NCBI GenBank assembly: GCA_044892525.1
Contig: CM097887.1
Location: 107,052,397-107,116,396 of the forward strand
DNA: 64,000 bases
Reading direction: 5' to 3'
DNA from: Schmidtea polychroa
Lineage: Eukaryota
Position 1 is the first letter of the stretch. The number at the start of each line of letters is the position of its first letter. This document shows, one piece after another, positions 1 through 64,000 of the stretch. The position numbers and the translations under genes were made by a program. Under the pieces are notes generated by a model. The model saw nothing but the letters and a program-made list of their open reading frames with translations, was not told the DNA's origin and made no database searches.

Positions 1-1
1 A

Positions 2-883
2 GGATTAGTATTTGCAGTGGAAAAATTTAGTCATTACCTATGGGGCCGAAAGGTAATTTTCTATACAGATCATAGACCATTGCAATGGCTGTTAAAACAT
101 AGAGACGAAGCATCAAAGTTAGTATGATGGGCATTGAGATTACAGCCATATAATATCGAAATTGTATATCGTAAAGGTAAAGCTAATGGTAATACAGATG
201 CATTATCATGAATGGAGCAAGAGCCCGAATTAGAAGATATAAAGGAATTAGAAGGGACAATCTTCATGCTAACAAGAGAGGCTAACACTTTGAGCGATTT
301 AGTAGAAGCACAGAAAAATGATGATGAAATCAATAAGATCAGACAAGCTATAGAAGCAAAGGCCATATCAAATGAACTTCAGAAATATTGGAGAAACATA
401 AAGATAAATTCATATTGGAAGAAGGTCGAATTAAATACGTGGAATCAAGAGATAATGTAATATTAGTGCCCAAGAAATACAGAGAATCACTATTATTACA
501 ATACCACGATGGAGCACTGGGAGGATATCTCTCAGCTAGCATACACTGTCAAGATTAAAAATGAAATAATTCTGGCCAGATATAAAAGATGATGTTAAAA
601 AGTGGTGTCAATCATGTAAGATATGTATAACCAGAAGGAACACAGGCAGGAAACCACATGTCCCATTAAAACCAATGTCAGTACCGTCCTCGCCAATGGA
701 GATGACTGCTATGGACGTACTAAGGCCCTTTAAAGAATCAAAGATGGGAAATAAATTTATCATAGTATTTTGCGACTACTTAACGAAGTGGCCCGAAGCA
801 TTCCCAATTCCGAATCATAAGGCAGACACAATTGCCAGAATCTTTGTAGAACAAATTGTATTTAGATATGCTTACCGACAGAG
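2..883 (+). mobile_element. pol: Degenerate Ty3/Gypsy LTR-retrotransposon pol remnant (RNase H C-terminus, integrase zinc finger and partial catalytic core)
   Basis: The frame from base 2 reads GLVFAVEKFSHYLWGRKVIFYTDHRPLQWL...KLV*WALRLQPYNIEIVYRKGKANGNTDALS*, a typical gypsy RNase H end. After frameshifts it reads LVPKKYRESLLLQYHDGALGGY...TLSRLKMK*FWPDIKDDVKKWCQSCKIC (HHCC finger), then PMEMTAMDVLRPF...NKFIIVFCDYLTKWPEAFPIPNHKADTIARIFVEQIVFRY (rve core, first Asp at 714-716). Stops at 125, 209 and 567. Confidence 0.95.
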
Positions 884-1181
884 AAAGGCTAGATTAGTGA
901 GTATTCCTGGTTGTAAAGGAATAAAGGCTTTGGATTGGTTTAGTATCAGAAAGGTAGCGAGTGTAAACCAGCCCCGCATAAATAAATTAATTAATAATTG
1001 TAGAGTTCAAAATACGTTAAACGGGACAACGAGAGATAAAACCTCAACTTGGTTATTCTTAATCATGATAGGGGGAGTAATTTGCATGATTTTAATTTTG
1101 ATATTAACCACCCTATGGATGCTTAGATTAAATATGCGGGATATTCGTTATTGGGAAATTATTTACGAAACCGAGGTATAG
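675..1181 (+). pseudogene. Chimeric junction ORF: integrase core fragment fused in frame to the env-like membrane-anchor tail of array unit 1
   Basis: Residues up to EQIVFRY are integrase. From KARLVSIPG onward the ORF is identical to the repeated 155-aa ORF. The switch is at 883. Confidence 0.85.
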
Positions 1182-1236
1182 GGGGAAAGTCTCACCATAT
1201 ACTAGGAAGTGTAAATATATATTTTATCTATTTTAT

Positions 1237-2256
1237 ATGTTATTTATATTAGTATGTAAACTAATGTGGGCTCAAATGAGCATCGGTAAAATCAGACATC
1301 AGCGTATGTCGACTTTGGTTACCCTGCGAGGGTCTATCACGAAAGTGATAAAAGCTGTTAATTATTTTATTTTTAGAAAAATGAATTATAACAGAGAACC
1401 AAAACCACCAGTCAAAGCAAATCGACGACACCCATTGGCAACGTACAATTCCCAGACTCGAGTTGAAACTGAAGTATATAGTACATACAAAGAAGAGTAC
1501 GTATACAGGTTCATCGGAACTACGGTCGCAGCAAAAATGAATCACCTCACCTCAAACTATTGGTATTATCCCAGGAGAGTGGATATTCCAAACGATTTCA
1601 AATTCGCAGGAGGGCCTCGAAAGCAAATGATGATAACGGTTATAAATAACCAAGGTAGATTAAAATTGGCGGAACTATGTAGAGATTATGGTTCATGTCC
1701 GAAATTGGAAAACATTTGGATCCATGCGATCAATAGGCCATTCACTGTGTTTATGGCGGGATTAGAGTTACCTGTTGAATTAGAAAAACAGTGTACCCTG
1801 GAGATATACCACGCTGATGGACGAGAACGGAATATTATGATCCAGGCAGCAGCAGTTGATACCATAATCGCAGTAGAAATCTTGGATTTCAGGAAGCCAT
1901 ACTCTATAGTTAGCAAAAACGAGCCAACTTGGATTTACAATGTAAATAAAGTTGATATACAGCAGTGTAAATCATTTGTGAGGAAGAAGTTAACCAAAGC
2001 CGAGGAGGACGAGGCTACAATTTTCATATCGGCAGGTTTTGCCAAATCCCGAATCGAACTGAAGGAGACAATTATCCAAATCGCAATTATGGATATGAGG
2101 GGAAATAATTTATTGAGTGCGGTAGTGACTCCCAGAGACCCTGTAAAACACTACCAAACGCACCAATACAAGTTAAAGGAACCTGATATTAGAGGAAACC
2201 TCGACGAAGATGATTGTTATCCTCTGATAAGATCTGCGATAAGAAAATACTTGTAG
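1237..2256 (+). CDS. ORF B (unit 1 copy, repeated in all units): unknown N-terminal domain plus the first half of a REX4/ISG20-like DEDDh exonuclease-fold domain; probable true start is ATG 1381
   Basis: 339-codon open frame, intact in 20 of 22 copies. The C-terminal IAIMDMRGNNLLSAVVTPRDPVKHYQT matches the spacing of REXO4-type VSIVN.YG....D.YVKP.EPVTDYRT. ATG 1381 has AAAA context and follows a TTTTTAG acceptor-like site. Confidence 0.7.
   Translation: MLFILVCKLMWAQMSIGKIRHQRMSTLVTLRGSITKVIKAVNYFIFRKMNYNREPKPPVKANRRHPLATYNSQTRVETEVYSTYKEEYVYRFIGTTVAAKMNHLTSNYWYYPRRVDIPNDFKFAGGPRKQMMITVINNQGRLKLAELCRDYGSCPKLENIWIHAINRPFTVFMAGLELPVELEKQCTLEIYHADGRERNIMIQAAAVDTIIAVEILDFRKPYSIVSKNEPTWIYNVNKVDIQQCKSFVRKKLTKAEEDEATIFISAGFAKSRIELKETIIQIAIMDMRGNNLLSAVVTPRDPVKHYQTHQYKLKEPDIRGNLDEDDCYPLIRSAIRKYL
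1358..1383 (+). promoter_or_regulatory. Candidate splice acceptor directly before ATG 1381
   Basis: TTAATTATTTTATTTTTAG|AAAAATG: TTAAT branch-like motif, T-rich tract, AG at 1375-1376. Confidence 0.4.
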
Positions 2257-2915
2257 GTATTTTGCTTAAAGATCTGATCTCGGTAGCCAATCTACCAGTG
2301 CAGCGGATACTGAGTATTCGTGACCTTTCTGCAAATAAACTATTAGAAACCAGAGGAGTCCCAATGATTCATGGTCATTACAGATTGGGATTCCCGACGA
2401 AAACTTTCCTGCGTACGGTTCCCGGAGAACCAAGGAATTTAGTGGTCACCAATGAGGCACTGGCGATACGTGCGGTTTATTTACATCTCAGAAACGAATG
2501 GTTAGACCATATCACGAAACCCCAGGAGGAATTCATTTCCGTAACTACAGCAGCGATAGTTGAGCAGGAAATGACGCAAAAGAAGAGATTACCCGAGCAA
2601 CCATCTACATCAGGGCAACCCAAGCCTAAGAGAAAATCACCTGTGGACTTACCACCGCCTCCAGCTATATCTATTGGAGAAGAAGATGAATATGAAACAT
2701 GCGTTAGCGAAACGGAGACAGCAAAATCACCCAAACAATCATCGGGAGCTGCCTATCAGCCAAAGGATAAATCGGAAAATGCGGTCAGAAAAGAAAATCC
2801 AGAAGGAGGCAAGGTGAAAAAGATGTTAAAGAAAATATTACCCATAAAAAGACAATTTTTTCAAATTTGTCAGACTTCCCGCCAACGGAAATTCTTCAAC
2901 GATGTCTTATTTTAA
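2214..2915 (+). CDS. ORF C (unit 1 copy, repeated in all units): -1-frame continuation of ORF B, with the second half of the exonuclease-like fold and a Pro/Lys/acidic low-complexity tail
   Basis: KILVG...IRDLS...EALAIRAVY parallels RILVGH...IRDT...DA.A.MRLY of REX4-family nucleases. It overlaps the end of ORF B. One extra base near the A-run at 2244-2247 would give a single 511-aa ORF from 1381 to 2915. Confidence 0.65.
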   Translation: MLSSDKICDKKILVGILLKDLISVANLPVQRILSIRDLSANKLLETRGVPMIHGHYRLGFPTKTFLRTVPGEPRNLVVTNEALAIRAVYLHLRNEWLDHITKPQEEFISVTTAAIVEQEMTQKKRLPEQPSTSGQPKPKRKSPVDLPPPPAISIGEEDEYETCVSETETAKSPKQSSGAAYQPKDKSENAVRKENPEGGKVKKMLKKILPIKRQFFQICQTSRQRKFFNDVLF

Positions 2916-3001
2916 AGCTCATTGCAATACCTTTCGAATGTGGTATAGAAATCCATATTATCAATATTATTGGTAAAGATATTATTTTTTCAAAATATTA
3001 T

Positions 3002-3070
3002 TTTTTCAAGGTCATTTATATTTTCAAGGTCATTTATATTTTCAAGGTCATTCATATTTTCAAGGTCATA
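3002..3070 (+). repeat. 18-bp minisatellite (TTTTCAAGGTCATTTATA), 4 copies per standard unit, 3 or 5 in variant units
   Basis: TCAAGGTCA at 3006, 3024, 3042 and 3060, exactly 18 bp apart. Unit 13 has five copies; units 17, 20 and 22 have three. Confidence 0.95.
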
Positions 3071-3231
3071 TTTTAAAATTTAAATTTTTAGAGTTCCCAC
3101 CAATGGAATTTATTGGCCGATGGCTAATTTTGAAGCCCACTGCAATACCTTTCGAATGACGTATAGATATTCATATTATCATTATTATTAATAAAGATAT
3201 TATTTTTTCAAAATATTATTTTTCAAGGTCG
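3006..3231 (+). promoter_or_regulatory. Homotypic cluster of NR5A (FTZ-F1/SF-1) / ERR-type extended half-sites
   Basis: Four TCAAGGTCA plus TCAAGGTCG at 3223-3231, all fitting the established YCAAGGYCR consensus. Function is untested. Confidence 0.4.
3190..3195 (+). terminator. Candidate polyadenylation signal AATAAA for the ORF B/C transcript
   Basis: AATAAA lies ~275 nt after the ORF C stop and is followed by T-rich sequence. The AT-rich context makes chance occurrence likely. Confidence 0.3.
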
Positions 3232-3277
3232 TTTATTTTTTCAAGGTTCAAAATCTGTTCAAAGCTACTGTTTTAGT

Positions 3278-3533
3278 CAATACGAACCAGATGAAATAAT
3301 CGGTTCCATCGCCAAAAGTGATGCTCATCCTATTTGAATATATGCCTGAAAGATTGAAAGATTCAAGTTGAAAGACCTGAAATTAGAAGACAATCACAAG
3401 AAAATATTATCCGGACAATTGATGTCCGGACTGCAATACTTGCATAATTTGAATATCGCCCACTGCAATATCAATCCAAAAGACATTTTCGATGATATGG
3501 CAGAATTAAGATTAAAGATTTCAAACTTTGGAG
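3278..3533 (+). pseudogene. Broken eukaryotic protein-kinase fragment (subdomains ~I and V-VII, CMGC-like), repeated in all units
   Basis: Three frames give QYEPDEIIGS (3278), VMLILFEYMPERL (3318) and QLMSGLQYLHNLNIAHCNINPKDIF...LKISNFG. These correspond to hinge FEYM, catalytic loop HRDIKP.N and DFG. It is frameshifted and lacks subdomains II-IV and VIII-XI. Confidence 0.8.
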
Positions 3534-4062
3534 GACGAATAATAAAATTGCGCTTATCGTCATATTAGAAAATGACCAGCGAGTCGAGAGATTAGTGCTC
3601 AACCATGCTTATCTAAGTAGAAGATGGACAATCAAACCAGATACCGTGACAAAGGCGAACATTTCGTATTTGGAATTTACGGAGAGAACCGGTTGGTATA
3701 CAATATATCAAGAAATAGTAAATCTAATACCTCCCACAAAAGGAGAACTAACTGGCAAAGAAGGAAAGGCTAGATTAGTGAGTATTCCTGGTTGTAAAGG
3801 AATAAAGGCTTTGGATTGGTTTAGTATCAGAAAGGTAGCGAGTGTAAACCAGCCCCGCATAAATAAATTAATTAATAATTGTAGAGTTCAAAATACGTTA
3901 AACGGGACAACGAGAGATAAAACCTCAACTTGGTTATTCTTAATCATGATAGGGGGAGTAATTTGCATGATTTTAATTTTGATATTAACCACCCTATGGA
4001 TGCTTAGATTAAATATGCGGGATATTCGTTATTGGGAAATTATTTACGAAACCGAGGTATAG
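3496..4062 (+). pseudogene. 5'-truncated type I membrane protein fragment, env-like (first complete copy, repeated in all units)
   Basis: The frame is open from 3496 to TAG 4062; the track's GTG start is not a eukaryotic start. It has NIS and NGT sequons, the hydrophobic helix WLFLIMIGGVICMILILILTTLWML and a short tail RLNMRDIRYWEIIYETEV. It has no ATG or signal peptide of its own. The env identity is inferred from topology and position after a gypsy pol. Confidence 0.55.
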
Positions 4063-49858: not shown

Positions 49859-52738
49859 AAAAGGCTAGATTAGTGAGTATTCCTGGTTGTAAAGGAATAA
49901 AGGCTTTGGATTGGTTTAGTATCAGAAAGGTAGAGAGTGTAAACCAGCCCCGCATAAATAAATTAATTAATAATTGTAGAGTTCAAAATACGTTAAACGG
50001 GACAACGAGAGATAAAACCTCAACTTGGTTATTCTTAATCATGATAGGGGGAGTAATTTGCATGATTTTAATTTTGATATTAACCACCCTATGGATGCTT
50101 AGATTAAATATGCGGGATATTCGTTATTGGGAAATTATTTACGAAACCGAGGTATAGGGGGAAAGTCTCACCATATACTAGGAAGTGTAAATATATATTT
50201 TATCTATTTTATATGTTATTTATATTAGTATGTAAACTAATGTGGGCTCAAATGAGCATCGGTAAAATCAGACATCAGCGTATGTCGACTTTGGTTACCC
50301 TGCGAGGGTCTATCACGAAAGTGATAAAAGCTGTTAATTATTTTATTTTTAGAAAAATGAATTATAACAGAGAACCAAAACCACCAGTCAAAGCAAATCG
50401 ACGACACCCATTGGCAACGTACAATTCCCAGACTCGAGTTGAAACTGAAGTATATAGTACATACAAAGAAGAGTACGTATACAGGTTCATCGGAACTACG
50501 GTCGCAGCAAAAATGAATCACCTCACCTCAAACTATTGGTATTATCCCAGGAGAGTGGATATTCCAAACGATTTCAAATTCGCAGGAGGGCCTCGAAAGC
50601 AAATGATGATAACGGTTATAAATAACCAAGGTAGATTAAAATTGGCGGAACTATGTAGAGATTATGGTTCATGTCCGAAATTGGAAAACATTTGGATCCA
50701 TGCGATCAATAGGCCATTCACTGTGTTTATGGCGGGATTAGAGTTACCTGTTGAATTAGAAAAACAGTGTACTCTGGAGATATACCACGCTGATGGACGA
50801 GAACGGAATATTATGATCCAGGCAGCAGCAGTTGATACCATAATCGCAGTAGAAATCTTGGATTTCAGGAAGCCATACTCTATAGTTAGCAAAAACGAGC
50901 CAACTTGGATTTACAATGTAAATAAAGTTGATATACAGCAGTGTAAATCATTTGTGAGGAAGAAGTTAACCAAAGCCGAGGAGGACGAGGCTACAATTTT
51001 CATATCGGCAGGTTTTGCCAAATCCCGAATCGAACTGAAGGAGACAATTATCCAAATCGCAATTATGGATATGAGGGAAATAATTTATTGAGTGCGGTAG
51101 TGACTCCCAGAGACCCTGTAAAACACTACCAAACGCACCAATACAAGTTAAAGGAACCTGATATTAGAGGAAACCTCGACGAAGATGATTGTTATCCTCT
51201 GATAAGATCTGCGATAAGAAAATACTTGTAGGTATTTTGCTTAAAGATCTGATCTCGGTAGCCAATCTACCAGTGCAGCGGATACTGAGTATTCGTGACC
51301 TTTCTGCAAATAAACTATTGGAAACCAGAGGAGTCCCAATGATTCATGGTCATTACAGATTGGTATTCCCGACGAAAACTTTCCTGCGTACGGTTCCCGG
51401 AGAACCAAGGAATTTAGTGGTCACCAATGAGGCACTGGCGATACGTGCGGTTTATTTACATCTCAGAAACGAATGGTTAGACCATATCACGAAACCCCAG
51501 GAGGAATTCATTTCCGTAACTACAGCAGCGATAGTTGAGCAGGAAATGACGCAAAAGAGGAGATTACCCGAGCAACCATCTACATCAGGGCAACCCAAGC
51601 CTAAGAGAAAATCACCTGTGGACTTACCACCGCCTCCAGCTATATCTATTGGAGAAGAAGATGAATATGAAACATGCGTTAGCGAAACGGAGACAGCAAA
51701 ATCACCCAAACAATCATCGGGAGCTGCCTATCAGCCAAAGGATAAATCGGAAAATGCGGTCAGAAAAGAAAATCCAGAAGGAGGCAAGGTGAAAAAGATG
51801 TTAAAGAAAATATTACCCATAAAAAGACAATTTTTTCAAATTTGTCAGACTTCCAGCCAACGGAAATTCTTCAACGATGTCTTATTTTAAAGCTCATTGC
51901 AATACCTTTCGAATGTGGTATAGAAATCCATATTATCAATATTATTGGTAAAGATATTATTTTTTCAAAATATTATTTTTTCAAGGTCATTTATATTTTC
52001 AAGGTCATTTATATTTTCAAGGTCATTCATATTTTCAAGGTCATATTTTAAAATTTAAATTTTTAGAGTTCCCACCAATGGAATTTATTGGCCGATGGCT
52101 AATTTTGAAGCCCACTGCAATACCTTTCGAATGACGTATAGATATTCATATTATCATTATTATTAATAAAGATATTATTTTTTCAAAATATTATTTTTCA
52201 AGGTCGTTTATTTTTTCAAGGTTCAAAATCTGTTCAAAGCTACTGTTTTAGTCAATACGAACCAGATGAAATAATCGGTTCCATCGCCAAAAGTGATGCT
52301 CATCCTATTTGAATATATGCCTGAAAGATTGAAAGATTCAAGTTGAAAGACCTGAAATTAGAAGACAATCACAAGAAAATATTATCCGGACAATTGATGT
52401 CCGGACTGCAATACTTGCATAATTTGAATATCGCCCACTGCAATATCAATCCAAAAGACATTTTCGATGATATGGCAGAATTAAGATTAAAGATTTCAAA
52501 CTTTGGAGGACGAATAATAAAATTGCGCTTATCGTCATATTAGAAAATGACCAGCGAGTCGAGAGATTAGTGCTCAACCATGCTTATCTAAGTAGAAGAT
52601 GGACAATCAAACCAGATACCGTGACAAAGGCGAACATTTCGTATTTGGAATTTACGGAGAGAACCGGTTGGTATACAATATATCAAGAAATAGTAAATCT
52701 AATACCTCCCACAAAAGGAGAACTAACTGGCAAAGAAG
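49859..52738 (+). repeat. Array unit 18 (2880 bp)
   Basis: KEEK/KVES membrane-ORF variants. A 1-G deletion at ~51076 truncates ORF B to 292 aa. ORF C G>V. Confidence 0.95.
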
Positions 52739-55603
52739 GAAAGGCTAGATTAGTGAGTATTCCTGGTTGTAAAGGAATAAAGGCTTTGGATTGGTTTAGT
52801 ATCAGAAAGGTAGCGAGTGTAAACCAGCCCCGCATAAATAAATTAATTAATAATTGTAGAGTTCAAAATACGTTAAACGGGACAACGAGAGATAAAACCT
52901 CAACTTGGTTATTCTTAATCATGATAGGGGGAGTAATTTGCATGATTTTAATTTTGATATTAACCACCCTATGGATGCTTAGATTAAATATGCGGGATAT
53001 TCGTTATTGGGAAATTATTTACGAAACCGAGGTATAGGGGGAAAGTCTCACCATATACTAGGAAGTGTAAATATATATTTTATCTATTTTATATGTTATT
53101 TATATTAGTATGTAAACTAATGTGGGCTCAAATGAGCATCGGTAAAATCAGACATCAGCGTATGTCGACTTTGGTTACCCTGCGAGGGTCTATCACGAAA
53201 GTGATAAAAGCTGTTAATTATTTTATTTTTAGAAAAATGAATTATAACAGAGAACCAAAACCACCAGTCAAAGCAAATCGACGACACCCATTGGCAACGT
53301 ACAATTCCCAGACTCGAGTTGAAACTGAAGTATATAGTACATACAAAGAAGAGTACGTATACAGGTTCATCGGAACTACGGTCGCAGCAAAAATGAATCA
53401 CCTCACCTCAAACTATTGGTATTATCCCAGGAGAGTGGATATTCCAAACGATTTCAAATTCGCAGGAGGGCCTCGAAAGCAAATGATGATAACGGTTATA
53501 AATAACCAAGGTAGATTAAAATTGGCGGAACTATGTAGAGATTATGGTTCATGTCCGAAATTGGAAAACATTTGGATCCATGCGATCAATAGGCCATTCA
53601 CTGTGTTTATGGCGGGATTAGAGTTACCTGTTGAATTAGAAAAACAGTGTACTCTGGAGATATACCACGCTGATGGACGAGAACGGAATATTATGATCCA
53701 GGCAGCAGCAGTTGATACCATAATCGCAGTAGAAATCTTGGATTTCAGGAAGCCATACTCTATAGTTAGCAAAAACGAGCCAACTTGGATTTACAATGTA
53801 AATAAAGTTGATATACAGCAGTGTAAATCATTTGTGAGGAAGAAGTTAACCAAAGCCGAGGAGGACGAGGCTACAATTTTCATATCGGCAGGTTTTGCCA
53901 AATCCCGAATCGAACTGAAGGAGACAATTATCCAAATCGCAATTATGGATATGAGGGGAAATAATTTATTGAGTGCGGTAGTGACTCCCAGAGACCCTGT
54001 AAAACACTACCAAACGCACCAATACAAGTTAAAGGAACCTGATATTAGAGGAAACCTCGACGAAGATGATTGTTATCCTCTGATAAGATCTGCGATAAGA
54101 AAATACTTGTAGGTATTTTGCTTAAAGATCTGATCTCGGTAGCCAATCTACCAGTGCAGCGGATACTGAGTATTCGTGACCTTTCTGCAAATAAACTATT
54201 GGAAACCAGAGGAGTCCCAATGATTCATGGTCATTACAGATTGGGATTCCCGACGAAAACTTTCCTGCGTACGGTTCCCGGAGAACCAAGGAATTTAGTG
54301 GTCACCAATGAGGCACTGGCGATACGTGCGGTTTATTTACATCTCAGAAACGAATGGTTAGACCATATCACGAAACCCCAGGAGGAATTCATTTCCGTAA
54401 CTACAGCAGCGATAGTTGAGCAGGAAATGACGCAAAAGAGGAGATTACCCGAGCAACCATCTACATCAGGGCAACCCAAGCCTAAGAGAAAATCACCTGT
54501 GGACTTACCACCGCCTCCAGCTATATCTATTGGAGAAGAAGATGAATATGAAACATGCGTTAGCGAAACGGAGACAGCAAAATCACCCAAACAATCATCG
54601 GGAGCTGCCTATCAGCCAAAGGATAAATCGGAAAATGCGGTCAGAAAAGAAAATCCAGAAGGAGGCAAGGTGAAAAAGATGTTAAAGAAAATATTACCCA
54701 TAAAAAGACAATTTTTTCAAATTTGTCAGACTTCCCGCCAACGGAAATTCTTCAACGATGTCTTATTTTAAAGCTCATTGCAATACCTTTCGAATGTGGT
54801 ATAGAAATCCATATTATCAATATTATTGGTAAAGATATTATTTTTTCAAAATATTATTTTTTCAAGGTCATTTATATTTTCAAGGTCATTTATATTTTCA
54901 AGGTCATTCATATTTTCAAGGTCATATTTTAAAATTTAAATTTTTAGAGTTCCCACCAATGGAATTTATTGGCCGATGGCTAATTTTGAAGCCCACTGCA
55001 ATACCTTTCGAATGACGTATAGATATTCATATTATCATTATTATTAATAAAGATATTATTTTTCAAGGTCGTTTATTTTTTCAAGGTTCAAAATCTGTTC
55101 AAAGCTACTGTTTTAGTCAATACGAACCAGATGAAATAATCGGTTCCATCGCCAAAAGTGATGCTCATCCTATTTGAATATATGCCTGAAAGATTGAAAG
55201 ATTCAAGTTGAAAGACCTGAAATTAGAAGACAATCACAAGAAAATATTATCCGGACAATTGATGTCCGGACTGCAATACTTGCATAATTTGAATATCGCC
55301 CACTGCAATATCAATCCAAAAGACATTTTCGATGATATGGCAGAATTAAGATTAAAGATTTCAAACTTTGGAGGACGAATAATAAAATTGCGCTTATCGT
55401 CATATTAGAAAATGACCAGCGAGTCGAGAGATTAGTGCTCAACCATGCTTATCTAAGTAGAAGATGGACAATCAAACCAGATACCGTGACAAAGGCGAAC
55501 ATTTCGTATTTGGAATTTACGGAGAGAACCGGTTGGTATACAATATATCAAGAAATAGTAAATCTAATACCTCCCACAAAAGGAGAACTAACTGGCAAAG
55601 AAG
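52739..55603 (+). repeat. Array unit 19 (2865 bp)
   Basis: KRR variant. 16-bp deletion at ~55055 in the AT-rich duplicate. Confidence 0.95.
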
Positions 55604-58469
55604 GAAAGGCTAGATTAGTGAGTATTCCTGGTTGTAAAGGAATAAAGGATTTGAATTGGTTTAGTATCAGAAAGGTAGCGAGTGTAAACCAGCCCCGCAT
55701 AAATAAATTAATTAATAATTGTAGAGTTCAAAATACGTTAAACGGGACAACGAGAGATAAAACCTCAACTTGGTTATTCTTAATCATGATAGGGGGAGTA
55801 ATTTGCATGATTTTAATTTTGATATTAACCACCCTATGGATGCTTAGATTAAATATGCGGGATATTCGTTATTGGGAAATTATTTACGAAACCGAGGTAT
55901 AGGGGGAAAGTCTCACCATATACTAGGAAGTGTAAATATATATTTTATCTATTTTATATGTTATTTATATTAGTATGTAAACTAATGTGGGCTCAAATGA
56001 GCATCGGTAAAATCAGACATCAGCGTATGTCGACTTTGGTTACCCTGCGAGGGTCTATCACGAAAGTGATAAAAGCTGTTAATTATTTTATTTTTAGAAA
56101 AATGAATTATAACAGAGAACCAAAACCACCAGTCAAAGCAAATCGACGACACCCATTGGCAACGTACAATTCCCAGACTCGAGTTGAAACTGAAGTATAT
56201 AGTACATACAAAGAAGAGTACGTATACAGGTTCATCGGAACTACGGTCGCAGCAAAAATGAATCACCTCACCTCAAACTATTGGTATTATCCCAGGAGAG
56301 TGGATATTCCAAATGATTTCAAATTCGCAGGAGGGCCTCGAAAGCAAATGATGATAACGGTTATAAATAACCAAGGTAGATTAAAATTGGCGGAACTATG
56401 TAGAGATTATGGTTCATGTCCGAAATTGGAAAACATTTGGATCCATGCGATCAATAGGCCATTCACTGTGTTTATGGTGGGATTAGAGTTACCTGTTGAA
56501 TTAGAAAAACAGTGTACCCTGGAGATATACCACGCTGATGGACGAGAACGGAATATTATGATCCAGGCAGCAGCAGTTGATACCATAATCGCAGTAGAAA
56601 TCTTGGATTTCAGGAAGCCATACTCTATAGTTAGCAAAAACGAGCCAACTTGGATTTACAATGTAAATAAAGTTGATATACAGCAGTGTAAATCATTTGT
56701 GAGGAAGAAGTTAACCAAAGCCGAGGAGGACGAGGCTACAATTTTCATATCGGCAGGTTTTGCCAAATCCCGAATCGAACTGAAGGAGACAATTATCCAA
56801 ATCGCAATTATGGATATGAGGGGAAATAATTTATTGAGTGCGGTAGTGACTCCCAGAGACCCTGTAAAACACTACCAAACGCACCAATACAAGTTAAAGG
56901 AACCTGATATTAGAGGAAACCTCGACGAAGATGATTGTTATCCTCTGATAAGATCTGCGATAAGAAAATACTTGTAGGTATTTTGCTTAAAGATCTGATC
57001 TCGGTAGCCAATCTACCAGTGCAGCGGATACTGAGTATTCGTGACCTTTCTGCAAATAAACTATTGGAAACCAGAGGAGTCCCAATGATTCATGGTCATT
57101 ACAGATTGGGATTCCCGACGAAAACTTTCCTGCGTACGGTTCCCGGAGAACCAAGGAATTTAGTGGTCACCAATGAGGCACTGGCGATACGTGCGGTTTA
57201 TTTACATCTCAGAAACGAATGGTTAGACCATATCACGAAACCCCAGGAGGAATTCATTTCCGTAACTACAGCAGCGATAGTTGAGCAGGAAATGACGCAA
57301 AAGAGGAGATTACCCGAGCAACCATCTACATCAGGGCAACCCAAGCCTAAGAGAAAATCACCTGTGGACTTACCACCGCCTCCAGCTATATCTATTGGAG
57401 AAGAAGATGAATATGAAACATGCGTTAGCGAAACGGAGACAGCAAAATCACCCAAACAATCATCGGGAGCTGCCTATCAGCCAAAGGATAAATCGGAAAA
57501 TGCGGTCAGAAAAGAAAATCCAGAAGGAGGCAAGGTGAAAAAGATGTTAAAGAAAATATTACCCATAAAAAGACAATTTTTTCAAATTTGTCAGACTTCC
57601 AGCCAACGGAAATTCTTCAACGATGTCTTATTTTAAAGCTCATTGCAATACCTTTCGAATGTGGTATAGAAATCCATATTATCAATATTATTGGTAAAGG
57701 TATTATTATTTTTTCAAAATATTATTTTTTCAAGGTCATTTATATTTTCAAGGTCAATCATATTTTCAAGGTCATATTTTAAAATTTAAATTTTTAGAGT
57801 TCCCACCAATGGAATTTATTGGCCGATGGCTAATTTTGAAGCCCACTGCAATACCTTTCGAATGACGTATAGATATTCATATTATCATTATTATTAATAA
57901 AGATATTATTTTTTCAAAATATTATTTTTCAAGGTCGTTTATTTTTTCAAGGTTCAAAATCTGTTCAAAGCTACTGTTTTAGTCAATACGAACCAGATGA
58001 AATAATCGGTTCCATCGCCAAAAGTGATGCTCATCCTATTTGAATATATGCCTGAAAGATTGAAAGATTCAAGTTGAAAGACCTGAAATTAGAAGACAAT
58101 CACAAGAAAATATTATCCGGACAATTGATGTCCGGACTGCAATACTTGCATAATTTGAATATCGCCCACTGCAATATCAATCCAAAAGACATTTTCGATG
58201 ATATGGCAGAATTAAGATTAAAGATTTCAAACTTTGGAGGACGAATAATAAAATTGCGCTTATCGTCATATTAGAAAATGACCAGCGAGTCGAGAGATTA
58301 GTGCTCAACCATGCTTATCTAAGTAGAAGATGGACAATCAAACCAGATACCGTGACAAAGGCGAACATTTCGTATTTGGAATTTACGGAGAGAACCGGTT
58401 GGTATACAATATATCAAGAAATAGTAAATCTAATACCTCCCACAAAAGGAGAACTAACTGGCAAAGAAG
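55604..58469 (+). repeat. Array unit 20 (2866 bp)
   Basis: KDLNW variant (55649, 55654), ORF B A>V (56478), and the same +3/-18 indel set as unit 17. Confidence 0.95.
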
Positions 58470-61337
58470 AAAAGGCTAGATTAGTGAGTATTCCTGGTTG
58501 TAAAGGAATAAAGGCTTTGGATTGGTTTAGTATCAGAAAGGTAGAGAGTGTAAACCAGCCCCGCATAAATAAATTAATTAATAATTGTAGAGTTCAAAAT
58601 ACGTTAAACGGGACAACGAGAGATAAAACCTCAACTTGGTTATTCTTAATCATGATAGGGGGAGTAATTTGCATGATTTTAATTTTGATATTAACCACCC
58701 TATGGATGCTTAGATTAAATATGCGGGATATTCGTTATTGGGAAATTATTTACGAAACCGAGGTATAGGGGGAAAGTCTCACCATATACTAGGAAGTGTA
58801 AATATATATTTTATCTATTTTATATGTTATTTATATTAGTATGTAAACTAATGTGGGCTCAAATGAGCATCGGTAAAATCAGACATCAGCGTATGTCGAC
58901 TTTGGTTACCCTGCGAGGGTCTATCACGAAAGTGATAAAAGCTGTTAATTATTTTATTTTTAGAAAAATGAATTATAACAGAGAACCAAAACCACCAGTC
59001 AAAGCAAATCGACGACACCCATTGGCAACGTACAATTCCCAGACTCGAGTTGAAACTGAAGTATATAGTACATACAAAGAAGAGTACGTATACAGGTTCA
59101 TCGGAACTACGGTCGCAGCAAAAATGAATCACCTCACCTCAAACTATTGGTATTATCCCAGGAGAGTGGATATTCCAAACGATTTCAAATTCGCAGGAGG
59201 GCCTCGAAAGCAAATGATGATAACGGTTATAAATAACCAAGGTAGATTAAAATTGGCGGAACTATGTAGAGATTATGGTTCATGTCCGAAATTGGAAAAC
59301 ATTTGGATCCATGCGATCAATAGGCCATTCACTGTGTTTATGGCGGGATTAGAGTTACCTGTTGAATTAGAAAAACAGTGTACTCTGGAGATATACCACG
59401 CTGATGGACGAGAACGGAATATTATGATCCAGGCAGCAGCAGTTGATACCATAATCGCAGTAGAAATCTTGGATTTCAGGAAGCCATACTCTATAGTTAG
59501 CAAAAACGAGCCAACTTGGATTTACAATGTAAATAAAGTTGATATACAGCAGTGTAAATCATTTGTGAGGAAGAAGTTAACCAAAGCCGAGGAGGACGAG
59601 GCTACAATTTTCATATCGGCAGGTTTTGCCAAATCCCGAATCGAACTGAAGGAGACAATTATCCAAATCGCAATTATGGATATGAGGGGAAATAATTTAT
59701 TGAGTGCGGTAGTGACTCCCAGAGACCCTGTAAAACACTACCAAACGCACCAATACAAGTTAAAGGAACCTGATATTAGAGGAAACCTCGACGAAGATGA
59801 TTGTTATCCTCTGATAAGATCTGCGATAAGAAAATACTTGTAGGTATTTTGCTTAAAGATCTGATCTCGGTAGCCAATCTACCAGTGCAGCGGATACTGA
59901 GTATTCGTGACCTTTCTGCAAATAAACTATTGGAAACCAGAGGAGTCCCAATGATTCATGGTCATTACAGATTGGGATTCCCGACGAAAACTTTCCTGCG
60001 TACGGTTCCCGGAGAACCAAGGAATTTAGTGGTCACCAATGAGGCACTGGCGATACGTGCGGTTTATTTACATCTCAGAAACGAATGGTTAGACCATATC
60101 ACGAAACCCCAGGAGGAATTCATTTCCGTAACTACAGCAGCGATAGTTGAGCAGGAAATGACGCAAAAGAGGAGATTACCCGAGCAACCATCTACATCAG
60201 GGCAACCCAAGCCTAAGAGAAAATCACCTGTGGACTTACCACCGCCTCCAGCTATATCTATTGGAGAAGAAGATGAATATGAAACATGCGTTAGCGAAAC
60301 GGAGACAGCAAAATCACCCAAACAATCATCGGGAGCTGCCTATCAGCCAAAGGATAAATCGGAAAATGCGGTCAGAAAAGAAAATCCAGAAGGAGGCAAG
60401 GTGAAAAAGATGTTAAAGAAAATATTACCCATAAAAAGACAATTTTTTCAAATTTGTCAGACTTCCAGCCAACGGAAATTCTTCAACGATGTCTTATTTT
60501 AAAGCTCATTGCAATACCTTTCGAATGTGGTATAGAAATCCATATTATCAATATTATTGGTAAAGATATTATTATTTTTTCAAAATATTATTTTTTCAAG
60601 GTCATTTATATTTTCAAGGTCATTTATATTTTCAAGGTCATTCATATTTTCAAGGTCATATTTTAAAATTTAAATTTTTAGAGTTCCCACCAATGGAATT
60701 TATTGGCCGATGGCTAATTTTGAAGCCCACTGCAATACCTTTCGAATGACGTATAGATATTCATATTATCATTATTATTAATAAAGATATTATTTTTCAA
60801 GGTCGTTTATTTTTTCAAGGTTCAAAATCTGTTCAAAGCTACTGTTTTAGTCAATACGAACCAGATGAAATAATCGGTTCCATCGCCAAAAGTGATGCTC
60901 ATCCTATTTGAATATATGCCTGAAAGATTGAAAGATTCAAGTTGAAAGACCTGAAATTAGAAGACAATCACAAGAAAATATTATCCGGACAATTGATGTC
61001 CGGACTGCAATACTTGCATAATTTGAATATCGCCCACTGCAATATCAATCCAAAAGACATTTTCGATGATATGGCAGAATTAAGATTAAAGATTTCAAAC
61101 TTTGGAGGACGAATAATAAAATTGCGCTTATCGTCATATTAGAAAATGACCAGCGAGTCGAGAGATTAGTGCTCAACCATGCTTATCTAAGTAGAAGATG
61201 GACAATCAAACCAGATACCGTGACAAAGGCGAACATTTCGTATTTGGAATTTACGGAGAGAACCGGTTGGTATACAATATATCAAGAAATAGTAAATCTA
61301 ATACCTCCCACAAAAGGAGAACTAACTGGCAAAGAAG
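58470..61337 (+). repeat. Array unit 21 (2868 bp)
   Basis: KEEK/KVES as in unit 18, +3 ATT, and the 16-bp deletion as in unit 19. Confidence 0.95.
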
Positions 61338-64000
61338 GAAAGGCTAGATTAGTGAGTATTCCTGGTTGTAAAGGAATAAAGGATTTGAATTGGTTTAGTA
61401 TCAGAAAGGTAGCGAGTGTAAACCAGCCCCGCATAAATAAATTAATTAATAATTGTAGAGTTCAAAATACGTTAAACGGGACAACGAGAGATAAAACCTC
61501 AACTTGGTTATTCTTAATCATGATAGGGGGAGTAATTTGCATGATTTTAATTTTGATATTAACCACCCTATGGATGCTTAGATTAAATATGCGGGATATT
61601 CGTTATTGGGAAATTATTTACGAAACCGAGGTATAGGGGGAAAGTCTCACCATATACTAGGAAGTGTAAATATATATTTTATCTATTTTATATGTTATTT
61701 ATATTAGTATGTAAACTAATGTGGGCTCAAATGAGCATCGGTAAAATCAGACATCAGCGTATGTCGACTTTGGTTACCCTGCGAGGGTCTATCACGAAAG
61801 TGATAAAAGCTGTTAATTATTTTATTTTTAGAAAAATGAATTATAACAGAGAACCAAAACCACCAGTCAAAGCAAATCGACGACACCCATTGGCAACGTA
61901 CAATTCCCAGACTCGAGTTGAAACTGAAGTATATAGTACATACAAAGAAGAGTACGTATACAGGTTCATCGGAACTACGGTCGCAGCAAAAATGAATCAC
62001 CTCACCTCAAACTATTGGTATTATCCCAGGAGAGTGGATATTCCAAACGATTTCAAATTCGCAGGAGGGCCTCGAAAGCAAATGATGATAACGGTCTAAA
62101 TAACCAAGGTAGATTAAAATTGGCGGAACTATGTAGAGATTATGGTTCATGTCCGAAATTGGAAAGCATTTGGATCCATGCGATCAATAGGCCATTCACT
62201 GTGTTTATGGCGGGATTAGAGTTACCTGTTGAATTAGAAAAACAGTGTACTCTGGAGATATACCACGCTGATGGACGAGAACGGAATATTATGATCCAGG
62301 CAGCAGCAGTTGATACCATAATCGCAGTAGAAATCTTGGATTTCAGGAAGCCATACTCTATAGTTAGCAAAAACGAGCCAACTTGGATTTACAATGTAAA
62401 TAAAGTTGATATACAGCAGTGTAAATCATTTGTGAGGAAGAAGTTAACCAAAGCCGAGGAGGACGAGGCTACAATTTTCATATCGGCAGGTTTTGCCAAA
62501 TCCCGAATCGAACTGAAGGAGACAATTATCCAAATCGCAATTATGGATATGAGGGGAAATAATTTATTGAGTGCGGTAGTGACTCCCAGAGACCCTGTAA
62601 AACACTACCAAACGCACCAATACAAGTTAAAGGAACCTGATATTAGAGGAAACCTCGACGAAGATGATTGTTATCCTCTGATAAGATCTGCGATAAGAAA
62701 ATACTTGTAGGTATTTTGCTTAAAGATCTGATCTCGGTAGCCAATCTACCAGTGCAGTGGATACTGAGTATTCGTGACCTTTCTGCAAATAAACTATTGG
62801 AAACCAGAGGAGTCCCAATGATTCATGGTCATTACAGATTGGGATTCCCGACGAAAACTTTCCTGCGTACAGTTCTTGGAGAACCAAGGAATTTAGTGGT
62901 CACCAATGAGGCACTGGCGATACGTGCGGTTTATTTACATTTCAGAAACGAATGGTTAGACCATATCACGAAACCCCAGGAGGAATTCATTTCCGTAACT
63001 ACAGCAGCGATAGTTGAGCAGGAAATGACGCAAAAGAGGAGATTACCCGAGCAACCATCTACATCAGGGCAACCCAAGCCTAAGAGAAAATCACCTGTGG
63101 ACTTACCACCGCCTCCAGCTATATCTATTGGAGAAGAAGATGAATATGAAACATGCGTTAGCGAAACGGAGACAGCAAAATCACCCAAACAATCATCGGG
63201 AGCTGCCTATCAGCCAAAGGATAAATCGGAAAATGCGGTCAGAAAAGAAAATCCAGAAGGAGGCAAGGTGAAAAAGATGTTAAAGAAAATATTACCCATA
63301 AAAAGACAATTTTTTCAAATTTGTCAGACTTCCCGCCAACGGAAATTCTTCAACGATGTCTTATTTTAAAGCTCATTGCAATACCTTTCGAATGTGGTAT
63401 AGAAATCCATATTATCAATATTATTGGTAAAGGTATTATTATTTTTTCAAAATATTATTTTTTCAAGGTCATTTATATTTTCAAGGTCAATCATATTTTC
63501 AAGGTCATATTTTAAAATTTAAATTTTTAGAGTTCCCACCAATGGAATTTATTGGCCGATGGCTAATTTTGAAGCCCACTGCAATACCTTTCGAATGACG
63601 TATAGATATTCATATTATCATTATTATTAATAAAGATATTATTTTTTCAAAATATTATTTTTCAAGGTCGTTTATTTTTTCAAGGTTCAAAATCTGTTCA
63701 AAGCTACTGTTTTAGTCAATACGAACCAGATGAAATAATCGGTTCCATCGCCAAAAGTGATGCTCATCCTATTTGAATATATGCCTGAAAGATTGAAAGA
63801 TTCAAGTTGAAAGACCTGAAATTAGAAGACAATCACAAGAAAATATTATCCGGACAATTGATGTCCGGACTGCAATACTTGCATAATTTGAATATCGCCC
63901 ACTGCAATATCAATCCAAAAGACATTTTCGATGATATGGCAGAATTAAGATTAAAGATTTCAAACTTTGGAGGACGAATAATAAAATTGCGCTTATCGTC
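61338..64000 (+). repeat. Array unit 22 (partial, cut by the window end), the most diverged unit
   Basis: KDLNW as in unit 20. Frameshift at ~62096 splits ORF B. Private N>S, R>W, P>L and L>F changes. +3/-18 indel set. Confidence 0.95.

What the first reader, a model, noticed from the sequence alone, without database searches (positions are those of the whole stretch)
883..64000. A protein-coding macrosatellite assembled from a retroelement-linked membrane-protein tail, a pseudo-exonuclease gene, nuclear-receptor sites and a dead kinase fragment
Seen: at least 22 head-to-tail, near-identical 2.9-kb units, each with four unrelated modules on one strand, abutting a gypsy integrase. Established: coding macrosatellites exist (human D4Z4/DUX4; Drosophila Stellate/Su(Ste), whose repeats combine a kinase-subunit-derived gene with transposon sequence and act through piRNAs). 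I recognise no described repeat with this module combination. Inference: this is the 3' accessory region of an env-bearing gypsy element, with or without adjacent host DNA, recently amplified. It could serve as a dosage-amplified gene, a small-RNA source against the parent element or kinase, or part of a selfish drive/suppressor system.
Basis: partly seen in the sequence, partly recalled or inferred. Interest (0 to 1): 0.85.

Follow-up and report, generated by a model that had tools for sequence, protein, structure and literature searches.

The report
Tandem array of a retroelement's tail
A 2.9-kb piece cut from the 3' end of an envelope-bearing gypsy-type retroelement, carrying a dead and frameshifted ISG20-like exonuclease gene, has very recently been copied head to tail at least 22 times; this is a young transposon-derived satellite, not a working gene family.

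Summary
There are 22 head-to-tail units (21 complete), mostly 2,881 bp and 99.4-100% identical, from base 883 to the window end. They abut a decayed gypsy-type RNase H-integrase fragment.

The large gene of the unit belongs to a protein family that, in all four long metagenomic contigs found, lies directly downstream of a gag-env-pol gypsy polyprotein. In every relative with upstream context that polyprotein ends in a membrane anchor, as it does here. The flanking pol fragment scores best against this same clade.

A profile of the family matches ISG20L2 and ISG20 exonucleases, and the predicted fold agrees. The window's branch lacks the catalytic residues. In all 22 units the gene is split by one frameshift.

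The kinase piece is a short, broken MAPK-like fragment. The "nuclear-receptor sites" come from one 18-bp minisatellite.

"Protein-coding macrosatellite" is therefore not supported. The best reading is a recent, probably neutral amplification of a dead element's 3' end. A role as a small-RNA source is untested. The array is an ordinary kind of repeat. The ISG20-like accessory gene of gag-env-pol elements appears undescribed in the papers I searched.

The parts
1..882 (+). Decayed pol fragment (end of RNase H, integrase zinc finger, start of integrase core) of a gypsy-type element of the gag-env-pol clade. It is broken by two frameshifts and three to four in-frame stops, and it ends abruptly inside the integrase core.
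   Evidence: Pfam RT_RNaseH E 5e-10, with weak H2C2 and rve matches. tblastn against clade polyproteins gives 3 pieces in 3 frames, 42-54% identity and 253-326 bits; generic gypsy proteins give at most about 250 bits.
883..64000 (+). Tandem array: 21 complete units and 1 truncated unit of about 2,881 bp, head to tail, running off the window end.
   Evidence: Anchor positions and spacing; 99.4-100% pairwise identity with nested shared variants.
883..1181 (+). Unit 1: 3' end of a membrane-protein reading frame (ectodomain remnant, one transmembrane segment, 23-residue tail, stop). In units 2-22 this frame is open for a further 56 codons into the preceding unit (155-codon ORF, e.g. 3595-4062).
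   Evidence: ORF list. Hydrophobicity 3.04, reached by 0 of 500 shuffles. Same position and architecture as the end of the upstream ORF in L001, L003, L005, L006 and L007. No sequence homology beyond the membrane segment.
1237..2915 (+). Unit 1: accessory gene of the element. It has an N-terminal beta-rich domain, an ISG20-like DEDDh exonuclease domain without the catalytic residues, and a low-complexity tail. It is broken by one frameshift shared by all 22 units; two units carry one further disabling change each.
   Evidence: 26 relatives found by exhaustive phmmer, best E 9e-36. The second frame aligns to the continuation of P0001, E 2e-14. The two pieces abut on the family profile at 207 and 67 bits. 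Family profile against ISG20L2 E 1e-22 and ISG20 E 1e-12. Fold match TM 0.79-0.80. ORF lengths per unit.
2864..3262 (+). Unit 1: 218-bp tandem duplication (84% identity), whose first copy holds an 18-bp minisatellite at 2998-3069 (3-5 copies depending on the unit), each copy carrying TCAAGGTCA.
   Evidence: the repeat finder families D1 and D2; TRF period 18, 4 copies; 86 motif matches at 18-bp spacing.
3257..3568 (+). Unit 1: fragment of a MAPK-like (CMGC) protein kinase covering roughly the hinge to the DFG region. It is cut at both ends, read in two frames with stops, and the catalytic-loop and DFG motifs are altered.
   Evidence: Pkinase E 8e-6, below the gathering score. MAPK6 E 2e-6, with the alignment showing the altered motifs. 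Three-frame translations.

Best explanation
The array is a young transposon-derived macrosatellite.

Origin. Its unit is a contiguous 3' piece of an endogenous, envelope-bearing Ty3/gypsy-type retroelement of the gag-env-pol kind. That piece is the last ~100 codons of the membrane protein encoded after integrase, followed by the element's accessory gene. The rest of the unit is ~850 bp of downstream sequence of unresolved origin, containing an internal duplication, a minisatellite and a MAPK-like pseudogene fragment.

State of the gene. The accessory gene descends from an ISG20/REXO-type 3'-5' exoribonuclease. Its branch had lost the catalytic residues while still part of elements with a long uninterrupted polyprotein frame. 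The copy that seeded the array had also acquired a frameshift.

Amplification (inferred). A first tandem duplication of the 2.9-kb segment, next to or within a dead relative of the same clade, was expanded and kept uniform by unequal exchange between units, including multi-unit blocks.

Function (inferred). No complete protein of the parent element can be made from it. Its most likely present state is selectively neutral repeat DNA. It could feed small-RNA silencing of related elements if it is transcribed.
For: Array shown.

One gene in two frames: ORF B aligns to P0001 residues 3-265 and ORF C to residues 272-405. The two pieces abut on the family profile. The same two-frame layout is present in all 22 units.

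Retroelement linkage: family members lie directly after gag / PF24664 glycoprotein / protease / RT / RNase H / integrase polyproteins in L001, L005, L006 and L007. The upstream ORF ends with a membrane anchor in 5 of 5 loci and in about 15 of 18 clade polyproteins. The flanking pol is collinear, on the same strand, and its top 18 matches are this clade.

Exonuclease ancestry: Pfam RNase_T in P0012; profile hits to ISG20L2, ISG20 and SDN1; fold hits.

Loss of catalysis: about half of the family keeps D-E-D/E-H-D; the window and P0001-P0008 do not.

Neutrality: 9 synonymous and 10 non-synonymous changes among copies against 5.5 synonymous expected, P 0.06. Two of 22 units already carry extra disabling changes.

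Multi-unit exchange: interleaved variant types among units 16-22.

Transposon-derived satellites and gag-env-pol errantiviruses are both described (PMC5932611; PMC13524379).
Against: The membrane tail matches its counterparts only in position and architecture, not in sequence.

The closest relatives of the accessory gene (P0001-P0005) lie on ~2-kb contigs without context. The linkage therefore rests on more distant members at 19-26% identity.

No LTR, primer-binding site or polypurine tract was identified, so the last 850 bp of the unit are unexplained.

The accessory gene is much less decayed than the adjacent pol fragment: 1 lesion against 5-6, P about 0.007. That could mean past selection on it.

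The excess of synonymous changes is borderline.

No expression or read-level data exist here. A systematic consensus error at the frameshift cannot be excluded.
Confidence: 0.72

Rival explanations
1. The array is a small-RNA source. It is transcribed, perhaps on both strands, and processed into piRNAs or siRNAs that silence active gag-env-pol elements carrying the same accessory gene, much as transposon-fragment clusters or Su(Ste) repeats do in Drosophila.
For: The unit is homologous to a retroelement family, and a dead relative lies next to it. High copy number and near-identity would give dense, uniform small-RNA coverage. In bdelloid rotifers 22% of transposon small-RNA reads map to such third ORFs (PMC5408684).
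Against: There are no expression or small-RNA data. All modules lie on one strand and there is no inverted arrangement in 63 kb. Any repeated transposon fragment would fit this reading equally well.
Confidence: 0.2
2. The array is a dosage-amplified, domesticated gene. A catalytically dead exonuclease-like RNA-binding protein (whole, if the frameshift is a consensus error or is bypassed; otherwise its N-terminal 339-residue part), and perhaps the 155-residue membrane-anchored peptide, are expressed from many copies and serve the host or a selfish system.
For: Reading frames of 339, 233 and 155 codons remain open in 20-21 of the units in AT-rich DNA. The gene is far less decayed than the adjacent pol fragment. 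There is a slight excess of synonymous changes. Dead DEDD nucleases that keep RNA binding are known, such as Maelstrom and EXD1, as cited in PMC5408684.
Against: All 22 units share the frameshift, which falls inside the exonuclease fold, where relatives have one continuous frame. At 99.4-100% identity, open frames say nothing about selection. Two units already carry extra disabling changes. The synonymous excess is not significant (P 0.06). No promoter or transcript evidence exists.
Confidence: 0.1
3. The unit is a whole non-autonomous derivative of the element (LTR plus a heavily deleted internal region) arranged as LTR-internal-LTR-internal by recombination between LTRs. On this view bases 2916-3763 would contain the LTR.
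For: Tandem LTR-internal arrays of non-autonomous elements are known (PMC7215508). Relatives L001 and L003 also carry short tandem repeats just 3' of the accessory gene, as the unit does.
Against: No LTR could be defined in the unit or in any relative. The N-part of the 155-codon ORF is no more similar to clade Gag N-termini than shuffled sequence is. The array's left edge lies inside a coding frame, not at an LTR end. A kinase fragment would be unusual LTR content.
Confidence: 0.12
4. The array is an assembly artefact: one or two real copies were expanded by the assembler.
For: Near-identical long repeats are hard to assemble, and five consecutive units are identical.
Against: There are 86 variable alignment columns. 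They include private changes, variants shared by nested subsets of non-adjacent units, and unit-length variants of 2,865-2,899 bp.
Confidence: 0.04

Closest known systems
Transposon-derived satellites and macrosatellites (e.g. tandem transposon arrays in Drosophila, PMC5932611; retrotransposon-derived tandem repeats in maize, PMC3648361; Cassandra arrays, PMC7215508)
   Same: Kilobase-scale head-to-tail units made of retroelement sequence, very high identity between units, and the signature of unequal exchange.
   Different: The unit here is neither a whole element nor an LTR or UTR repeat. It is an internal 3' coding piece (membrane-protein tail plus accessory gene) joined to a kinase pseudogene fragment.
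GAG-ENV-POL errantivirus-like Ty3/gypsy elements with HSV/gB-type envelope, described in Nematoda, Bryozoa and Platyhelminthes (PMC13524379)
   Same: Relatives of the window's gene sit in elements with zinc-knuckle Gag, then a fusion glycoprotein (PF24664), then protease-RT-RNase H-integrase. The window's flanking pol fragment scores best with this clade.
   Different: The window holds only fragments: no gag, no env, no RT and no LTR. The paper does not mention an exonuclease gene after pol (0 occurrences). I did not test whether PF24664 and that paper's gB-type envelope are the same thing.
ORF3 exonucleases and small transmembrane ORFs of bdelloid rotifer Juno/Vesta LTR retrotransposons (PMC5408684)
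   Same: A 3' accessory slot of an LTR retroelement is occupied by a DEDD-superfamily exonuclease gene, with small membrane proteins nearby. The slot is modular (an Ank-repeat ORF in L008).
   Different: The rotifer ORFs are DEDDy (RNase D-like). This family is DEDDh, ISG20/REXO-like, with an extra N-terminal beta-rich domain. The window's branch is catalytically dead.
ISG20 / ISG20L2 / REXO / SDN1 3'-5' exoribonucleases
   Same: Sequence-profile and fold similarity over about 170 residues. About half of the retroelement family keeps the five catalytic residues.
   Different: The window copy lacks those residues and is frameshifted. It is encoded by a retroelement, not a host gene, and is flanked by an N-terminal domain and a disordered tail.
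Coding macrosatellites (D4Z4/DUX4) and Stellate/Su(Ste)
   Same: A kilobase-scale tandem array whose unit contains gene-derived sequence, with a possible small-RNA role.
   Different: No unit encodes a complete relative of its parent protein. No evidence exists on transcription, sex linkage or a target gene.

Membership tests
Transposon-derived macrosatellite | Head-to-tail repetition of a unit of 1 kb or more, many copies, high identity | tested here: met
   22 units of about 2,881 bp, 99.4-100% identical.
Transposon-derived macrosatellite | Unit homologous to a mobile element | tested here: met
   The accessory-gene family is linked to gag-env-pol polyproteins in 4 of 4 long contigs. Membrane-tail synteny. 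Flanking pol of the same clade.
Intact GAG-ENV-POL errantivirus-like element | gag, env, protease-RT-RNase H-integrase and two LTRs | tested here: not met
   Only a decayed RNase H-integrase fragment (1-882) and the 3' tail are present. No LTR or primer-binding site was found.
ISG20/REXO-type DEDDh exonuclease (Pfam RNase_T) | Sequence and fold similarity to the DEDDh domain | tested here: met
   Met at family level: profile A4 against ISG20L2 E 1e-22, and the P0001 model against ISG20 TM 0.80. The window pieces score 207 and 67 bits on the family profile. The window pieces alone give no Pfam hit.
ISG20/REXO-type DEDDh exonuclease (Pfam RNase_T) | Five catalytic residues D-E-D-H-D | tested here: not met
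   The window has none of the five as such in the aligned columns; one column holds a conservative acidic replacement. The P0001-P0008 branch likewise lacks the set.
ISG20/REXO-type DEDDh exonuclease (Pfam RNase_T) | Uninterrupted reading frame | tested here: not met
   One frameshift inside the domain, shared by all 22 units.
Protein kinase (CMGC/MAPK-like) | Complete catalytic domain with intact HRD and DFG motifs | tested here: not met
   About 50-85 residues only, in two frames with stops. Both motifs are altered in the alignment to MAPK6. The Pfam score is below the cut-off.
Coding macrosatellite (D4Z4-like) | Each unit encodes a complete protein | tested here: not met
   Compared with full-length relatives of about 560 residues, the gene is split in every unit. 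The other modules are fragments.
Coding macrosatellite (D4Z4-like) | Transcription and translation of the unit | not testable with these tools
   No expression data available.
Small-RNA-producing repeat (Su(Ste)- or piRNA-cluster-like) | Small RNAs mapping to the array, antisense to a target | not testable with these tools
   No small-RNA data. Only the homology to a retroelement family is shown.
Nuclear-receptor response element | Extended half-site motif present | tested here: met
   TCAAGGTCA occurs 3-5 times per unit, but all copies come from one 18-bp minisatellite. It therefore counts as one independent occurrence.
Nuclear-receptor response element | Receptor binding or regulatory activity | not testable with these tools
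   No binding or expression data.

The most novel reading that the evidence does not exclude
The array is not inert. The retroelement's dead-exonuclease accessory gene was kept by selection after the rest of the element decayed, which would explain why it is so much better preserved than the adjacent pol fragment. It was then amplified as a host or selfish locus acting against the parent gag-env-pol elements, either through abundant small RNAs or through an RNA-binding decoy protein. This would be a Su(Ste)-like or Fv1-like defence built from an accessory gene of an invertebrate endogenous retrovirus.
Probability: 0.1. Interest if true: 0.75.

Novelty: new member of a known kind. Interest (0 to 1): 0.4.

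Why it matters
The array itself is another example of a satellite born from a transposon. It is a clean and very young one: the left junction, the parent element clade and the order of events (catalytic death, then frameshift, then amplification) can all be read from sequence.

The by-product is more useful. A family of ISG20-like DEDDh exonuclease genes, about half still with catalytic residues, occupies the 3' accessory slot of gag-env-pol errantivirus-like elements, next to a second small membrane protein fused after integrase. An antiviral-type RNA exonuclease carried by a retroelement bears on how such elements handle their own RNA or host RNA. I found no description of it in the papers I searched.

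Tried and rejected
Direct searches with the window's own proteins gave nothing:
- Pfam on ORF B and ORF C and their halves, up to E 10.
- Word-indexed protein searches.
- PDB phmmer.
- Exact look-up of ORF B.
- IMG/VR scan.
- A 33-mer scan of metagenome contigs.
- A single-sequence AlphaFold model, which was useless at pLDDT 32.
Only the exhaustive phmmer search found relatives.

Idea that the N-part of the 155-codon ORF is a Gag N-terminus, which would make the unit a deleted whole element: hhalign scored 12.7, against 11.3 +/- 2.5 for shuffles. Rejected.

Sequence homology of the membrane tail to the clade's post-integrase membrane module: only the hydrophobic segment matched, P 0.045. This is not evidence.

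LTR search by self-comparison of L001, L003, L005-L008 found no terminal repeat pairs.

Idea that the 218-bp sub-repeats are decayed copies of the kinase fragment: it rests on a 13-nt identity, z 3.8 for one copy and 0.9 for the other. Inconclusive.

Rfam and tRNA scans were empty. The BFVD fold search gave only generic DEDDh and AlkB-like hits, none closer than cellular ISG20.

An intron or programmed frameshift bridging the two frames was not modelled. Relatives have a continuous frame there and no tool predicts an intron.
Full report
**1.

A 30-base anchor taken at position 883 recurs 22 times on the + strand. Most spacings are 2,881 bp, with a few of 2,865-2,899 bp. The last unit (from 61338) is cut by the window end. 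A MAFFT alignment of the units gives 99.4-100% pairwise identity, and units 10-14 are identical. TRF reported nothing only because its longest period is 500 bp.

The 86 variable alignment columns include changes private to one unit and changes shared by nested, non-adjacent subsets: units 16-22 as a group, and 17/20/22 and 18/21 within it. This is what unequal exchange of single units and multi-unit blocks produces, and it argues against an assembler loop. All long ORFs lie on the + strand.

**2. The left flank (1-882)**

The flank is a dead gypsy-type pol fragment covering the end of RNase H, the integrase zinc finger and the start of the integrase core. Against related polyproteins it aligns in three pieces in three frames, with three to four in-frame stops in about 290 codons. 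It stops abruptly inside the integrase core, where the array begins. The integrase frame runs on into the unit's first ORF, which happens by chance one time in three.

**3. The large gene of the unit**

The unit shows two overlapping frames of 339 and 233 codons. Neither gives a Pfam, PDB or word-indexed hit. The exhaustive phmmer search with the first frame found 26 relatives, best P0001 (562 aa, E 9e-36), which aligned to its first 265 residues. The second frame aligns to P0001 residues 272-405, E 2e-14.

On a profile built from 30 relatives without the window, the two pieces score 207 and 67 bits and abut at the same profile position. The two frames are therefore one gene of about 560 codons split by a single frameshift. 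The same layout is seen in all 22 units, so the frameshift predates the amplification. Two units carry one further disabling change each.

**4. What that gene is**

- Distant relatives P0012 and P0010 hit Pfam RNase_T.
- The family profile hits ISG20L2 (7yw5, E 1e-22), ISG20 (1wlj, E 1e-12) and the plant small-RNA-degrading nuclease SDN1 (E 5e-8).
- An AlphaFold model of P0001 with the family alignment is confident over residues 10-372. Its best PDB matches are ISG20L2 and ISG20 (TM 0.79-0.80), followed by Pan2, SDN1, Pol III epsilon and TREX2.
- The N-terminal ~170 residues form a beta-rich domain with weaker AlkB/PHD2/cupin-like matches (TM 0.3-0.46). The last ~190 residues are disordered.
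- In the catalytic columns about half of the family keeps D-E-D/E-H-D. The window and its nearest branch (P0001-P0008) do not.

P0006, a member of this dead branch, sits in an element with an uninterrupted 3,181-codon polyprotein. Loss of catalysis therefore preceded the death of the window's copy.

**5. Where that gene lives**

Four relatives lie on long contigs. In all four the gene starts about 70-360 bp after the end of a 3,000-4,000-residue polyprotein. By Pfam, the L001 polyprotein contains in order: a Gag zinc knuckle, a viral fusion glycoprotein (PF24664, E 1e-90), protease, RT, RNase H and integrase.

This gag-env-pol order is the non-canonical arrangement recently described for HSV/gB-type errantiviruses of nematodes, bryozoans and flatworms (PMC13524379). 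That paper does not mention an exonuclease gene. The nearest described analogue is the DEDDy exonuclease ORF3 of rotifer Juno/Vesta elements (PMC5408684), which belongs to a different exonuclease subfamily.

**6. The membrane tail**

In L001, L003, L005, L006 and L007 the ORF upstream of the accessory gene ends with a strong hydrophobic segment 19-101 residues before its stop. In about 15 of 18 clade polyproteins this segment is preceded, 250-400 residues earlier and after integrase, by a signal-like segment. This looks like a small type-I membrane protein module.

The window has the same layout: a transmembrane segment (hydrophobicity 3.04, reached by 0 of 500 shuffles), 23 residues, a stop, about 200 bp, then the conserved start of the accessory gene. 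There is no sequence similarity beyond the hydrophobic segment. The correspondence is therefore one of position and architecture only.

**7. The flank belongs to the same clade**

I scored 120 long gypsy polyproteins against the flank. The 18 best (253-326 bits, 42-54% identity) are all members of the L001 clade, and 14 of them carry PF24664. The next best are generic gypsy proteins at 29-41% identity.

The flank and unit 1 are thus collinear, same-strand pieces of the same kind of element. However, the flank is much more decayed than the accessory gene: 5-6 lesions in about 290 codons against 1 in about 370, P about 0.007. Either the array grew from a younger copy next to an older one, or the accessory gene was preserved for a time by selection. 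This remains unexplained.

**8. The rest of the unit (2916-3763)**

- A 218-bp segment is duplicated at 84% identity. Its first copy contains an 18-bp minisatellite of 3-5 copies.
- Each minisatellite copy carries TCAAGGTCA, which accounts for all 86 matches in the window. It is one motif occurrence multiplied, not evidence of regulation.
- The kinase piece matches MAPK6/ERK3 best (E 2e-6). It covers about 50-85 residues in two frames with stops, and both the catalytic-loop and DFG motifs are altered.
- None of this region has a counterpart in the related loci, and no LTR could be recognised. Its origin, whether element 3' UTR/LTR or captured host DNA, is open.

**9. Selection**

Among copies the accessory gene shows 9 synonymous and 10 non-synonymous changes, against 5.5 synonymous expected from the observed mutation types (P 0.06). 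At 99.4-100% identity, open frames carry no information about constraint.

**10. Verdict**

'Protein-coding' is not supported.

- Shown: the array, the single broken gene, its exonuclease ancestry and dead catalytic site, its linkage to gag-env-pol elements, and the clade of the flank.
- Inferred: amplification by unequal exchange, present neutrality, and any small-RNA role.

The array is a new member of a known kind. The accessory-gene family is the more novel by-product.

- One search printed a table of variable alignment columns, indels included, before I knew that the unit came from a virus-like element.

This report gives counts only.

Noticed in passing
L001:8900-9934; polyproteins P0032-P0053: Most polyproteins of the clade continue after integrase into a signal-like hydrophobic segment, a 250-400-residue region with N-glycosylation motifs, and a C-terminal membrane anchor. 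This is a second, small membrane-protein module fused in frame to pol, in addition to the large fusion glycoprotein between gag and protease.
   Followed up: partly
P0001 model, residues about 10-170; window 1381-1900: The N-terminal domain of the accessory protein folds as a beta-rich double-stranded-helix-like domain. Its weak structural matches are to AlkB-family and prolyl-hydroxylase dioxygenases and cupins (TM 0.3-0.46). No sequence family was found.
   Followed up: partly
L008:14902-17118; Pfam lists of P0036, P0044, P0046, P0053, P0078: The 3' accessory slot of this clade is modular. L008 carries an Ank-repeat ORF in place of the exonuclease-like gene. Other clade polyproteins list Ank repeats, immunoglobulin domains or a dUTPase.
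   Followed up: no
window 2917-2938, 3135-3156, 3458-3479: Both copies of the 218-bp duplication share a 13-22-nt near-identity with the part of the kinase fragment that encodes its catalytic loop. This hints that the duplication may be older decayed copies of the same fragment. The statistics are weak (z 3.8 and 0.9).
   Followed up: partly
window 46993-64000 (units 17-22): The right-hand units fall into interleaved variant types (17/20/22 share an 18-bp deletion and linked changes; 18/21 share others; 19/21 share a 16-bp deletion). This suggests duplication of blocks of about three units. Units 1-15 are almost uniform.
   Followed up: partly
window 1-882 versus 1237-2915: The flanking pol fragment carries 5-6 disabling lesions in about 290 codons, while the accessory gene carries one in about 370 (P about 0.007). 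The two are unlikely to have decayed for the same time without selection.
   Followed up: partly
L001:11760-11902; L003:2629-2698: Two related elements also have short tandem repeats (about 70-bp and 34-bp periods) directly 3' of the accessory gene, as the window unit does. L005 and L006 do not clearly show this.
   Followed up: partly
L008:17034-24564: The contig carrying this clade element continues into bacterial-type genes (luciferase-like monooxygenase, NAD-binding, Mnh antiporter subunits). This is probably a chimeric metagenome assembly, so context from such contigs needs care.
   Followed up: no
L005:13763-14464: Short exons matching the prolyl 4-hydroxylase alpha N-terminal region lie downstream of the element. 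This suggests an animal host for that relative. The record name of L004 (BUSI22-1 metagenome) gives no firm host.
   Followed up: no
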